A DNA stretch of 64,000 nucleotides from Ostrea edulis (Eukaryota), in assembly GCF_947568905.1 (NCBI RefSeq), contig NC_079172.1, positions 31,682,001-31,746,000 of the forward strand, read 5' to 3'. Positions 35,623 to 39,634 of the stretch are shown here, piece by piece. Made by a program: the position numbers and the translations under genes. How positions within the stretch are numbered: position 1 is the stretch's first letter; each line of letters starts with the position of its first letter. The notes below the pieces were generated by a model. The model was not told the origin of the DNA. It searched no databases and saw nothing but the letters and a program-made list of their open reading frames with translations.

Positions 35623-37158
35623 GATCAGATTTTTTGTCAATGATAATTTCTGTTTGCAAACTCCATTTATATATAATTTCGGGTGGACGTTATGGATGAT
35701 GATTAGGTCTTTGGAGTTTCTTAACTCTAATTTCGTAACACTATAATTGGTTGGTTGAGTAATGACCGAGAAGTGCCCCTATTGATCGTATTTATCATCT
35801 GCACCCCTTTTAGTCACGTTTGAAAAATACCGCCCGGTTGTCCAATACCTGCGCAAACATTGCAGCAGGAAGTGTCCCACTTATTTACGTGGCCTCAATA
35901 ATTAACTCGGTTAATGATCTCAGCTTACTGATTAATTTTACACAAAATATATATGTATTATGAATGTAGTTATGGAACAACATCAATCATTGTATTTCCG
36001 CTGTATATTATATAATCATTAATTCCTACACGAATTACTAACAATTAGTTTACTAACTTTAGGGGGGGGGGGGGGAACCGAACAATTTCATGGAGACAGG
36101 ATCAGAATCATGCTCATTTCTATATATGGTTGGGGAAACTGGAGACTCTTGTCTGTCATTATATCATTGTATCAGCTTGAAATGTACATGAGGGCTATTC
36201 TCAGCCAGCGCCAGTACTGAGTAGGGAAAATAAACAATCAAAATAATTTGATTATAAAATACATTTATTATATATGATATTTAAAGGGTCACCAACATGC
36301 GTAAAAATGGTGGTGTGACTGAATGTGTGAGATTTGTGACACACACTTGTCTCATACAAAAATGTCCTAATGATTTGTTATATAATTTCGGAACCGTCTT
36401 TCAAACCAGGGGGGCAGCTCCGGAATTTGAAGCTACGGTTAGAGTGGGCGCCGTCCGGGTTTTATGCAAGGGGTATGATCAGCCCTGGTTGGGGCCCAGG
36501 GGACGATTTTTAAAAAATAATTTTTAAACGTTTGTAAATATAAGACCTGCAAAATCACAGCAAAACTCCTGTCATGTAGAAATATATCTTTTTTACTTTT
36601 TTTCTTACGAATGGTTGTAAATTAATCAGATTATTAAAAAAAAATCATGTTCAATAGGACGATTTACTGATGAAGTTGAAAAAGATAACCATGCCCGCTT
36701 GTATTGTACTCGTATAATAAACATCAAAGAGTCATTTTAAACGCTACTTTGTAAAACCAATTACTTAAAGTCGAGTGACTGACACATTTGAATAAAAAAA
36801 AGAATAATTAGAATAATCAGAGTTTCCATATTTGCAATAACAGTGGCGGATCCAGAGATTTTTTATTCCAATGAATGATATTGTATTTTTTGTTCAACAT
36901 GTAGGGAGAGGGTGAATTAAGTTTTTATAAACTGTGCCCAATCCCGTTGTAATATTTGATATAAAATAAATTAATGAATTATAAGATAAATCTAATAACT
37001 CATTTAGTAAATGAGACAAAGAAAAGATTAATGGGATGTCGAAAAAAATATGGTATGAATTGATGAAAAGTGTAAAGGTTGCGTTGCTGATGGAAATACC
37101 CGCGAATCCTCCGTCACATGATCAATTTAGCTCATGCGACTTTTTTATCAAATGGAAA

Positions 37159-39634
37159 ATGGAGGGACGAACTACAGCATGTGTGATATGTGCTGCAATA
37201 GTGATGATGACACTTCAAGATTTTTATACTTTTGCTAAAATTATGGATGTTGCGCAGTGTCCAAGATGTCTGAACAAACGTGGAGTTGTAACGTGTAAAA
37301 CTTACAAGAACAATTGTGTCAGTGTTTTCCTTAATCGTGCCAGAACCCAAATCCGTGAAATTCGCGTCCCTATGTGTACTATCGATATTGTGGTCAACAG
37401 AAAGTGGGAGTCCCTTACTGACTTTCCAGTAGTGCGGGACATTAGGGGACATCAATGTGCCAGTGTATTCAGTAAGTAGTACTTAGGGTTTTCATTATTT
37501 CAAATTAACGTGTATTTGACCACTTAATATATCATTTTTTGAACGACAAGTCGTTGTTTGTCGTTGTTGTGGTGATTTGCTAGAAGAGGAGGGGGTTTTT
37601 AACGAATGATGTATCGTGAGAAAAATAGGACCACGTGATATTTTCATAAACCAATCAAATCACTGCGTCTTTTACTATGGAATGTTTACGTTTGTACAAC
37701 TTGTGTATTGGTATTTAATTATGTAATTTAGTCTTAACTGATTCTTAGAACGTTTCTGTAAATATCAAGAACAAATTAATAACTCGTGTTTTCAGTTCTA
37801 ACTGTGACTGGTATCTAAAATAAGTACTCGTATGATCGGGTTCGGGGTACATACAGGGAATGTGAAATCGGAAGTTTGAAACGTTCCCTTTGTTAGAGGG
37901 TGTACAGTGAAACTGAAAGTAAACATTTTGTTTTTGTTGTAGATCCCCTAAAAAAAAATAATCACCGCTCCTTTTAAAAATGTATTGCAGATATGCCTAC
38001 TGAAGAGTCCAAGATGTTGGCCACCACTACAATACCATCCACTTCATCAGCAAATACACAAGGGAGGGCTTGGATTGGGCCAGCGTCATTGAAAAGTACA
38101 ACTCAAGGTAGGACTGCATTTGTTGAACTAGGTTGACTTGGTAGTTTTACACAATTTAACAAGAGTATAATTCAGAAATATTATTGAAAGATTAAAAAGC
38201 AAAGTAGTATTTTTTTCTTACCAGGAAAAAAACCCCCAAAATAGTCACCACCTCTGTGTAAAAAAAAAATGTATTGCAGATATGCCTACTGAAGAGTCCA
38301 AGATGTTGGCCATCTTTACAGTGCCATCCACTTCATCAGCAAATACACAAGGGAGGGCTTGGATTGGGCCAGCGTCATTGAAAAGTAAAACTCGAGGTAG
38401 GACTGCTTTAACGTTATATATCCCTCAGCAAGGCGGGGTAACTCATACATATATAAGATAATGATGAAATTAAAAAAAAAATGTTTTCTATTATGTTCTG
38501 ATTGAATGATTATCAATTATCCACCAGAATACATATCTATATCAACTGCGAATCTTGATCAACATATAAATTGATAATGGAAAAGAGCATTTTCAATTTC
38601 TGACACCTGAGGGATGGATAACCTTAATTGAACTAGGTTGACTCAGTAGTTTTACACAACAATTTAACAAGAGTATAATTCAGAAATATTATTGAAAGAT
38701 TAAAAAGCAAAGTAGTATTTTTCTTACCAGGAAAAAAAAACCCCCAAAATAGTCACCACCTCTGTGTAAAAAAAAAAAATGTATTGCAGATATGCCTACT
38801 GAAGAGTCCAAGATGTTGGCCACTTCTACAATACCATCCACTTCATCAGCAAGAACACAAGGGAGGGCTTGGATTGGGCCAGCGTCATTGAAAAGTACAA
38901 CTCGAGGTAGGACTGCTTTTGTTGAAAAATGTTAATAAATAGATATCATACATGTTAAGCCAATTTCAATTTCTTTTAGAAATGAATTGTAAAGCTTTAT
39001 TGTTAAATTCTTGTGTAGACATGCAAATTCTTTGTTGAGACTATTACGATTATCACAATTATGATTTTTGGGCTAATGTTTTGTGTTTTTAAATTCCAGG
39101 GTTACAATTATCTACCGAAGAATTTGACGTGCCTGGGACCGCAGGTCAGTTTGAAACCCTACTGATGTTAATTATCCATGAGAATGAACTGAACAGATTT
39201 TTTTTTTTTGATAATTACTTGTTGTATTTGTATGTTGTGTTTGATGCATTGATGAAAGTGTTAATTGTAATTACTTGTTCTAACTTTTAATAGGTGTTTT
39301 TGCCTGGGCAGTTGTCACAACACTTGCCATTATTCTGATTGTGATAAGGCATCTTTTGCTTTCGAAAATAAAATGCTGCTGTAGAAGGCAAGTCAACCAT
39401 CTTCCTAGAACACCATCACCACCTTCAACACCGTGCACTCGTGAAACTGTAGAGCAGATAAGAATGCATTTATTGCACACACCATCTTCCATTGCTACCA
39501 CCCCCAGCAGTTTATCGGCGTCAACCCCCAACACAGTAGTTTCAGTAACTCGACCTCTCCTTGGTGATGATGACGATGAACCTATTTCACAACGTACCAG
39601 GGCTAAAAGTGTCGCAAAGAGACTTAGCCTGTAA
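37159..39634 (+). CDS. Spliced type-I membrane glycoprotein, ~349 aa. Exons 37159-37471, 37991-38107, 38280-38396, 38790-38906, 39100-39144, 39294-39634
   Basis: All junctions are GT-AG and phase 1, giving 1050 nt in frame. Features: signal-like TTACVICAAIVMMTL, Cys-rich ectodomain, three 39-aa Ser/Thr-rich repeats, TM segment GVFAWAVVTTLAIILIVI, CCC cluster, Pro/Ser/Thr tail. TATAAAA at 36960. The ORF is also open from 37036. Confidence 0.8.

What the first reader, a model, noticed from the sequence alone, without database searches (positions are those of the whole stretch)
37036..39634. Six-exon type-I membrane glycoprotein inside a non-enveloped virus-like element, with a triplicated mucin-like exon
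Seen: not visible in the ORF track as one gene. Six GT-AG, phase-1 exons assemble into signal peptide, Cys-rich head, 3 x 39-aa S/T-rich repeats, TM, CCC and a P/S/T tail ending DEPISQRTRAKSVAKRLSL. The 117-nt exon was duplicated together with its flanking intron sequence (37991, 38280, 38790). Inference: a surface receptor or decoy whose stalk length is tuned by symmetric exon duplication or skipping. It could act in superinfection exclusion, immune shielding (like adenovirus E3 membrane proteins) or cell-to-cell spread.
Basis: partly seen in the sequence, partly recalled or inferred. Interest (0 to 1): 0.8.

Follow-up and report, generated by a model that had tools for sequence, protein, structure and literature searches.

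The report
Mucin-like membrane gene in oyster Maverick
A virus-like jumping element in the flat oyster genome carries a spliced gene for a surface protein with a small cysteine head on a repeat stalk. The gene sits at the same place in the related element copies I examined in three oyster genera, so it belongs to the element, but what it does is not yet known.

Summary
Six GT-AG, phase-1 exons (37036-39634, + strand) join into a 390-aa protein with no internal stop. That protein is identical to RefSeq "uncharacterized protein LOC130046265/6" of Ostrea edulis, so the model is already annotated. Its link to the element was not found in the searchable literature.

The gene lies in the left accessory region of a precisely bounded 20,609-bp Maverick/Polinton (33211-53819). 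The element has about 235-bp terminal inverted repeats, AGTAGT/ACTACT ends and a 6-bp target duplication.

The 117-nt exon is triplicated together with its intron flanks. Three other O. edulis copies carry five such exons. All 21 exon copies keep their splice sites and reading frame.

Relatives in Crassostrea and Saccostrea sit at the same place, between a roughly 162-aa spliced gene and the polymerase gene. They share the exon plan: signal plus head, symmetric stalk exons, membrane anchor plus tail, with every intron in phase 1.

The head matches no Pfam family, solved structure or predicted viral fold.

Function is inferred only. Most likely it is a cell-surface, mucin-like host-interaction protein. 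It does not resemble a fusogen. Exon skipping, glycosylation and expression remain untested.

The parts
33211..53819 (.). Maverick/Polinton-type element, 20,609 bp
   Evidence: Ends read AGTAGT...ACTACT. A second O. edulis copy becomes homologous to the window exactly from 33211, in a different flank. Core genes were found by Pfam.
33205..33210 (.). Left copy of the 6-bp target-site duplication (TACGTC)
   Evidence: The same hexamer lies at 53820-53825.
53820..53825 (.). Right copy of the 6-bp target-site duplication
33211..33444 (+). Left terminal inverted repeat, with about 22-nt internal subrepeats
   Evidence: 93.8% complementary to 53586-53824.
53586..53819 (-). Right terminal inverted repeat
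37036..39634 (+). The six-exon gene, for a mucin-like type I membrane protein of 390 aa (RefSeq LOC130046265/6)
37036..37471 (+). Exon 1: N-terminal extension, signal-like hydrophobic stretch and the six-Cys head. Donor is GTAAGT. A possible alternative start lies at 37159.
   Evidence: AlphaFold2 gives six strands for the head at pLDDT about 70-88.
37991..38107 (+). Exon 2: repeat exon copy 1 (117 nt, phase 1-1)
38280..38396 (+). Exon 3: repeat exon copy 2
38790..38906 (+). Exon 4: repeat exon copy 3
37976..38933 (+). Tandem array of the exon plus its intron flanks. Start-to-start spacing is 289 and 510 nt.
39100..39144 (+). Exon 5: 45-nt juxtamembrane exon (phase 1-1)
39294..39634 (+). Exon 6: membrane anchor, Cys triplet, Pro/Ser/Thr-rich tail and a basic C-terminal motif. 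Stop codon at 39632-39634.
33943..35184 (-). Neighbouring spliced gene (162-aa product, no family match), found at the same place in every copy examined
   Evidence: Pfam finds nothing on its largest exon.
40810..45499 (+). Protein-primed family-B DNA polymerase gene, given as one part. It reads in two frames in the window, while RefSeq calls one 1519-aa product.
46218..46901 (-). Packaging-ATPase-like ORF (weak Pfam hits)
47137..47493 (-). Adenain/Ulp1-like cysteine protease ORF
47490..48806 (-). Double-jelly-roll major capsid protein candidate
   Evidence: PF21738, E 0.003, below the Pfam cut-off.
49779..50969 (-). Retroviral-type integrase with a chromodomain

Best explanation
This is a conserved accessory gene of an oyster lineage of Maverick/Polinton (adintovirus-like) elements. 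The host spliceosome processes it into an mRNA for a single-pass type I membrane protein.

The protein has these parts, in order:
- a signal-like hydrophobic segment;
- a small beta-rich head of about 70 aa with six cysteines;
- a disordered stalk rich in Ser, Thr and Pro, built from symmetric phase-1 exons;
- a membrane anchor followed by cysteines;
- a repeat-prone cytoplasmic tail ending in a short conserved basic motif.

Stalk length changes by unequal recombination that adds or removes a unit of about 797 nt holding two exons.

Shown here: the gene model, its conservation, its place in the element, and the exon copy-number variation.

Inferred: the protein enters the secretory pathway, is O-glycosylated, and sits on the surface of cells in which the element is expressed. 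There its extended stalk and fast-evolving head would act on host recognition or adhesion, as a shield or a receptor mask, rather than as a capsid part or a fusion machine.

My confidence is about 0.9 for what it is, about 0.85 that it is an element gene, and about 0.3 for the shielding or host-interaction mechanism.
For: Gene model: it equals the RefSeq protein exactly.

Element context: TIRs, TSD, AGTAGT ends, polymerase, integrase, protease, ATPase and capsid candidate.

Synteny: the order is a roughly 162-aa gene, then the membrane gene, then the polymerase. This holds in five O. edulis copies and in Crassostrea angulata, Saccostrea echinata and S. cucullata.

Exon plan: in all four species every intron is phase 1 and every internal exon is a multiple of three.

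Head conservation: six invariant columns, including three Cys, and 14 nearly invariant columns across ten proteins.

Evolutionary rate: the head is about 45% identical between genera, against 77-83% for the polymerase.

Repeat exons: three or five per copy, and all 21 copies have AG/GT and no stop. The one length change is 3 nt.

Stalk composition: Ser+Thr is 30-37% in every species although the repeat sequences are unrelated.

Structure prediction: AlphaFold2 gives a moderately confident beta head, a stalk and tail below pLDDT 50, and a helix at 276-311.

Functional precedent: mucin-domain viral surface proteins that sterically mask host surface molecules and abolish adhesion are described in PMC2936550. 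That paper also cites the bracovirus protein Glc1.8.
Against: - I could reach no transcript, junction-read or protein evidence. The public model may rest on prediction alone.
- The three repeat exons in the window differ at 5-8 of 117 positions, about as much as the intron (10 of 170). Nearly all differences are nonsynonymous (7:0, 4:1, 6:2). So there is no sign of purifying selection on the repeats since they duplicated.
- There are no N-glycosylation sequons in the O. edulis protein, and O-glycosylation was not tested.
- With the annotated start, the hydrophobic stretch is 43 residues from the N-terminus, so signal cleavage is uncertain.
- Nothing ties the head to any known ligand or fold.
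Confidence: 0.55

Rival explanations
1. It is a virion membrane or budding protein. The head would bind a cell-surface target, and the conserved basic C-terminal motif would bind the capsid. The element's particles would then acquire, or be wrapped in, a membrane that carries this protein.
For: Both ends of the protein are conserved across genera: the head, and the anchor with the C-terminal motif. The spacers on each side of the membrane vary. Nematode Mavericks are reported to have acquired a membrane fusogen (preprint 10.1101/2022.07.12.499685). Element copies in two Saccostrea species are about 98% identical at non-homologous sites.
Against: The head is only about 70 aa and shows no fusion-protein features. 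No herpesvirus gB or other viral glycoprotein came back from the sequence or fold searches. The core genes are of the adenovirus-like, capsid-only type. No particle has been observed.
Confidence: 0.12
2. It works in superinfection exclusion or receptor masking. Displayed on a cell that already carries an active element, the head would occupy or hide the entry receptor, so further copies or related viruses could not enter.
For: The architecture fits this reading as well as it fits shielding: a type I surface protein with a fast-evolving head and variable reach.
Against: No receptor is known and no similarity to any host receptor or ligand was found. The element is chromosomally inherited, so exclusion at the cell surface has an unclear benefit.
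Confidence: 0.13
3. It is a host gene that was captured once and is now carried as passive cargo, with no role for the element.
For: It has spliceosomal introns and the phase 1-1 symmetric exons typical of animal extracellular proteins. Reported intact vertebrate Mavericks have intronless genes (PMC8097293). RefSeq annotates it as an ordinary oyster gene.
Against: An exhaustive profile-free search of 1.84 billion representative proteins found only six clusters. Every full-length member I looked up lies at the same position inside an element copy. The gene is intact in five of five O. edulis copies, and it is retained across three genera while its neighbours are also retained. No free-standing host paralogue was found.
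Confidence: 0.15
4. It is an annotation artefact or a decaying pseudogene. The open frames would then be chance, and the repeats non-coding duplications.
For: No expression evidence was reachable. The substitution pattern in the repeat exons looks neutral.
Against: The frame is 390 codons long in a 35% G+C sequence. The same exon plan and phases occur in four species. The cysteines are conserved. All 21 repeat-exon copies are intact and the only length change is in frame.
Confidence: 0.03

Closest known systems
Accessory regions of vertebrate Mavericks (Barreat and Katzourakis 2021, PMC8097293)
   Same: Variable genes lie between a terminal repeat and the core modules. The element has the same AGT-AGT / ACT-ACT end motif and the same 6-bp target duplication.
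   Different: Intact vertebrate elements are reported to have intronless genes. Here the left accessory region holds two spliced genes that are conserved across three oyster genera.
MFUS-1, the herpesvirus-gB-like fusogen of nematode Mavericks (Widen et al., preprint 10.1101/2022.07.12.499685)
   Same: It is a Maverick-borne protein with a signal peptide and a single membrane anchor.
   Different: MFUS-1 is 866 aa with class III fusion-protein domains. This protein has a head of about 70 aa, a disordered stalk and no match to gB in any search.
Glc1.8 of Microplitis demolitor bracovirus, and the mucin-like domain of Ebola virus GP (as described in PMC2936550)
   Same: Both are virus-encoded mucin-domain surface proteins. 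They mask host surface molecules sterically and abolish adhesion. Glc1.8 likewise belongs to a virus-derived element of an invertebrate.
   Different: The resemblance is in architecture and composition only. Neither protein came back as a hit. I fetched neither and compared no sequence. No function has been tested for the oyster protein.
Adenovirus E3 type I membrane proteins
   Same: They are accessory, non-structural type I membrane proteins of a virus with an adenain-type protease and a jelly-roll capsid.
   Different: Pfam found no E3 family at E up to 10 on the exons or up to 1 on the whole proteins. There was no structural match either.
Cellular membrane-tethered mucins
   Same: They share a signal, a Pro/Thr/Ser-rich tandem-repeat stalk of variable length, a single anchor and a cytoplasmic tail. 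RefSeq even names three O. edulis copies 'mucin-2-like'.
   Different: No SEA, EGF, VWD or other mucin-associated domain is present. The stalk is short, at 120-211 aa. The head is a family of its own.

Membership tests
Maverick/Polinton element (context of the gene) | Protein-primed family-B DNA polymerase | tested here: met
   PF03175, E 9e-21 and 1e-24.
Maverick/Polinton element (context of the gene) | Retroviral-type (rve) integrase | tested here: met
   PF00665, E 1.5e-11, with a chromodomain.
Maverick/Polinton element (context of the gene) | Double-jelly-roll capsid protein, packaging ATPase and adenain-like protease | tested here: inconclusive
   The capsid hit (PF21738, E 0.003) and the ATPase hits are below the Pfam cut-offs. 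The protease hit PF02902 scores 21.3 bits against a cut-off of 20.7. Gene order matches the vertebrate elements.
Maverick/Polinton element (context of the gene) | Terminal inverted repeats, 6-bp target duplication and more than one copy with different flanks | tested here: met
Mucin-like type I membrane protein (descriptive class) | N-terminal signal sequence | tested here: inconclusive
   The hydrophobic stretch is at residues 44-63 of the annotated protein, or 3-22 if translation starts at 37159. No signal-peptide predictor was available.
Mucin-like type I membrane protein (descriptive class) | Single membrane anchor near the C-terminal third | tested here: met
   Hydropathy peak at 277-299 and an AlphaFold2 helix at 276-311. 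It is conserved in relatives.
Mucin-like type I membrane protein (descriptive class) | Tandem-repeat stalk rich in Ser, Thr and Pro, and disordered | tested here: met
   Ser+Thr 30-37% and Pro 4-10% in six proteins of four species. pLDDT is below 50 for residues 144-278.
Mucin-like type I membrane protein (descriptive class) | Dense O-glycosylation | not testable with these tools
   No predictor or glycoproteomic data were available. There is no N-X-S/T sequon in the O. edulis protein.
Class III viral fusogen (gB / nematode MFUS-1) | Large multidomain ectodomain with fusion loops and a central coiled coil | tested here: not met
   The structured ectodomain is about 70 aa. No gB-type hit appeared in the PDB sequence, profile or fold searches or in BFVD.
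Adenovirus E3 CR1-type membrane glycoproteins | Conserved E3 CR1 or CR2 domains recognisable by Pfam | tested here: not met
   No such Pfam hit.
Bracovirus Glc1.8-type anti-adhesion mucin | [quoted passage not shown] | not testable with these tools
   The likeness is functional only, taken from PMC2936550. No sequence relative came back.

The most novel reading that the evidence does not exclude
The protein is the surface and budding adaptor of a membrane-wrapped form of the oyster Maverick. The conserved head would engage a cell-surface target, and the conserved basic C-terminal motif would engage the capsid. The variable spacers would set the geometry. This would give a capsid-type virus-like element a route between cells or hosts. 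The near-identical copies at non-homologous sites in two Saccostrea species would be traces of such movement.
Probability: 0.1. Interest if true: 0.85.

Novelty: new variant of a known kind. Interest (0 to 1): 0.55.

Why it matters
Mavericks are usually described by their core genes for replication and capsid. Their accessory genes are largely uncharted, and reported intact vertebrate elements have no introns.

Here a spliced membrane-protein gene has stayed at one position in the element copies of Ostrea, Crassostrea and Saccostrea that I examined. It evolves far faster than the polymerase, and its stalk length differs between copies within one genome.

That pattern is what one expects of a gene that meets the host at the cell surface. 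It gives a concrete, sequence-defined candidate for how such elements deal with invertebrate cellular immunity or with cell contact.

There is also a practical point for genome annotation. Proteins named 'mucin-2-like', 'fibrous sheath CABYR-binding protein-like' and 'rho family-interacting cell polarization regulator 1-like' in four oyster RefSeq sets are one element-borne family.

Tried and rejected
Searches that found nothing:
- Pfam on each exon by reference and on four whole proteins. Nothing above noise.
- PDB sequence search with exon 1 and with a profile of eight heads. Nothing.
- Word-index protein search with exon 1. No hit, because the only close proteins are longer than the length window allows. 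The exhaustive search then found the family.
- Foldseek of the head model against the PDB (best E 3.9) and BFVD (best E 0.74). No fold match.
- Tandem Repeats Finder on the region. It missed the array because the two periods differ; the repeat finder found it.
- Paper searches for the locus names and for Maverick membrane or mucin genes. No description of this family.
- ARAGORN on the element. The tRNA-like stretch near 35420-35500 is not a tRNA gene.

Tests without power:
- A selection test between the S. echinata and S. cucullata copies. Exons and introns are both 0.5% diverged.

Ideas rejected:
- The shorter S. cucullata isoform is not exon skipping. It starts at an internal Met.
- The protein is not a fusogen or an E3-like protein (see the membership tests).
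Full report
1. What is in the sequence

The region 36800-39900 was read directly. Six exons on the + strand have canonical GT..AG borders:
- E1 37036-37471, with donor GTAAGT;
- E2 37991-38107;
- E3 38280-38396;
- E4 38790-38906;
- E5 39100-39144;
- E6 39294-39634.

Exon 1 is 436 nt. The internal exons are 117, 117, 117 and 45 nt, so every intron is in phase 1. Joined inside a script only, they give 1173 nt, which is 390 codons with one terminal stop.

The three 117-nt exons translate to 38-residue cores that are 87-92% identical. 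They lie in a direct-repeat family of 159 nt at 37976, 38265 and 38775, which includes the acceptor and donor flanks. The basic period is 289 nt (exon plus a 172-nt intron), and the second intron carries about 220 extra bases. The window holds no N.

2. The model is already public

I searched the exons one by one by reference. Pfam and the PDB gave nothing, and the word-index search with exon 1 gave nothing. Because the family scans left the protein open, I used the exhaustive search with exon 1.

It returned six clusters. The best, P0001, is 390 aa and identical to my joined model. It is RefSeq XP_056003944.1 / XP_056006181.1, [quoted passage not shown]. The window is O. edulis chromosome record OX387712.1, and locus L002 is 100% identical to window 32036-44634.

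From then on I used the public id P0001 wherever the whole protein was needed.

3. The element around it

Pfam on the long ORFs shows these genes:
- a protein-primed family-B polymerase (40810-45499);
- an ATPase-like ORF (46218-46901);
- an adenain/Ulp1-like protease (47137-47493);
- a double-jelly-roll candidate (47490-48806, weak);
- an rve integrase with a chromodomain (49779-50969).

A self-comparison found inverted repeats at 33206-33444 and 53586-53824, 93.8% complementary. The exact ends are AGTAGT at 33211 and ACTACT ending at 53819. They are flanked on both sides by TACGTC. A second copy on another chromosome begins with the same AGTAGT in an unrelated flank, and it is 99.5% identical to the window from 33211 onward.

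The same end motif and the 6-bp duplication are reported for vertebrate Mavericks (PMC8097293). So the gene lies in the left accessory region of a 20,609-bp Maverick, 3.8 kb from its left end and 1.2 kb upstream of the polymerase gene.

The polymerase reads in two frames in the window, which is one frame change. RefSeq calls one 1519-aa product here and in another copy. It calls a 1528-aa product in Saccostrea echinata, where the first ORF ends at a comparable point. A shared intron is therefore more likely than a break, but I did not model it. I did not audit the other core genes for breaks.

4. Copies and relatives

Five O. edulis loci encode the protein. All five show the same order: a spliced gene on the minus strand (162-aa product), then the membrane gene, then the polymerase.

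- Two copies have three repeat exons and give 390 aa.
- Three copies have five repeat exons and give 467-468 aa.
- Spacing alternates between 289 and about 508 nt. The difference between the two forms is one unit of about 797 nt holding two exons.
- All 21 exon copies keep AG and GT and have no in-frame stop. Two are 114 nt, an in-frame loss.

Relatives occur in four other species:
- Crassostrea angulata, 434 aa;
- C. gigas, 361 aa (LOC117686208);
- Saccostrea echinata, 332 aa;
- S. cucullata, 332 and 232 aa.

The three I looked up sit at the same place in an element copy. Polymerase similarity follows downstream in each, and the small upstream gene is present in each.

Exact mapping of each protein on its locus gives these exon lengths:
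- 349/171/183/602 in C. angulata;
- 283/93/165/144/314 in S. echinata;
- 283/93/144/144/335 in S. cucullata.

Again every intron is phase 1 and every internal exon is a multiple of three. In all four species the first exon is signal plus head, and the last exon starts at the anchor. The introns are thus shared by relatives, not chosen to bridge breaks.

5. The protein

Alignment of ten family members shows six invariant columns: R77, C78, G83, C87, N93 and C94 in P0001 numbering. Fourteen more columns are nearly invariant, among them three more Cys. The head is about 45% identical between genera, while the polymerase is 77-83% identical.

The stalk repeats are unrelated in sequence between genera. 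Even so, they are 30-37% Ser+Thr everywhere. In Crassostrea the tail also carries a Pro/Gln repeat whose length differs between C. gigas and C. angulata.

At the C-terminus, all six full-length rows share Thr-Arg, then a Lys two positions on. A basic pair follows, which is followed by Leu in five of the six rows.

AlphaFold2 on the head with a ten-row alignment gave a mean pLDDT of 70.7. It predicts a helix over the signal-like stretch and six strands. The full-length model has the stalk (144-278) and tail (305-390) below pLDDT 50 and a helix at 276-311. Foldseek found no convincing match in the PDB or BFVD.

The O. edulis protein has no N-X-S/T sequon. The annotated start is 37036. The Met at 37159 has an A at -3 and a G at +4, is conserved in relatives, and aligns with the Saccostrea start. 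Which start is used remains open. TATA-like hexamers lie at 36926 and 36960, and the only AATAAA before the polymerase gene is at 40587.

6. Selection

Within the window, the repeat exons differ at 5-8 of 117 sites and the matching intron at 10 of 170. Almost all exon changes are nonsynonymous. So there is no purifying signal on the repeats since they duplicated.

The two Saccostrea copies are too alike to test, with 0.5% divergence in both exons and introns. The case for function therefore rests on four things:
- conservation of the head, the anchor and the C-terminal motif across genera;
- the shared exon plan;
- intactness in all copies seen;
- in-frame length changes only.

7. Mechanism

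Shown: a conserved element gene with this architecture, and stalk-length variation by exon-unit gain or loss.

Inferred: secretory routing, O-glycosylation and surface display.

I think the most likely role is a host-interaction protein on the surface of cells that express the element. This follows the pattern of mucin-domain viral proteins that mask surface molecules and abolish adhesion. Examples are Ebola GP and, as cited in the same paper, bracovirus Glc1.8 (PMC2936550). I put this at about 0.3.

The rivals are a membrane or budding adaptor for particles, receptor masking, passive captured cargo, and artefact.

The proteins I had in mind as comparators were adenovirus E3 membrane proteins, herpesvirus gB / nematode MFUS-1, Glc1.8 and the Ebola GP mucin domain. 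None came back as a hit. I fetched none and wrote out no letters.

8. Conduct

- I fetched eight partial oyster loci of at most 13.4 kb, each holding the gene with 5-kb flanks. I reached them by look-up of proteins that my own searches had returned, in order to count exons and check neighbours. I state this so that it can be judged.
- I fetched no whole element.
- I met no contig that I took for human.
- Possible slip: my first and second notebook entries record the bounds of the two polymerase ORFs as the ORF tool printed them. I wrote them before I had considered whether the frame change is a break. I have deleted nothing and do not repeat the bounds here.

Noticed in passing
window 33943-35184 (- strand): A second spliced gene (162-aa product, no family match) lies in the left accessory region. 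It is found at the same position in all eight loci examined, and is about 49-53% identical between genera.
   Followed up: partly
window 51111-53146 (- strand): The right accessory region holds three ORFs of note: one with CARD plus PC4 domains (51111-52181), one matching the PP1-catalytic-subunit binding region of GADD34/ICP34.5-type proteins exactly at the Pfam cut-off (52438-52680), and another PC4 ORF (52706-53146). These look like host-response genes carried by the element.
   Followed up: no
window 8961-12051 and 29342-32458, enclosing 17884-23688 (- strand): Two 3-kb arrays of tandem repeats with a period of about 180 nt are inverted relative to each other and 94% identical. They enclose an intronless 1934-aa ORF with PHD, BAG, UCH and Ulp1-protease domains, and a reverse-transcriptase fragment at 14614-15459. 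This may be another large mobile element abutting the Maverick.
   Followed up: no
L004 and L005 (Saccostrea echinata and S. cucullata): The element copies of the two species are about 98% identical over 8.3 kb, and 99.5% within the gene, introns included. Their flanks outside the terminal repeat are not homologous. Either the species are very close or the element has moved recently.
   Followed up: partly
window 40810-45499 (+ strand): The polymerase gene reads in two frames (one frame change), yet RefSeq gives a single product here and in relatives. The first ORF ends at a comparable point in Saccostrea, which suggests a conserved intron in a core Maverick gene.
   Followed up: partly
window 35420-35560 and 36290-36860: A tRNA-like stretch is followed by a (TA)n run, and there is a G+C-richer block ending in a motif (CAGTGGCGGATCCA) that also occurs just outside the left target duplication at 33187-33200. 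These are probably small repeat elements. Both lie in stretches that align with the second O. edulis copy.
   Followed up: no
window 3020-3730 and 7196-7617: Two arrays of short tandem repeats with periods of about 22 nt and 41 nt lie outside the element.
   Followed up: no
RefSeq names of the family: Members are named 'mucin-2-like', 'fibrous sheath CABYR-binding protein-like' and 'rho family-interacting cell polarization regulator 1-like'. These names come from low-complexity similarity and are misleading.
   Followed up: yes
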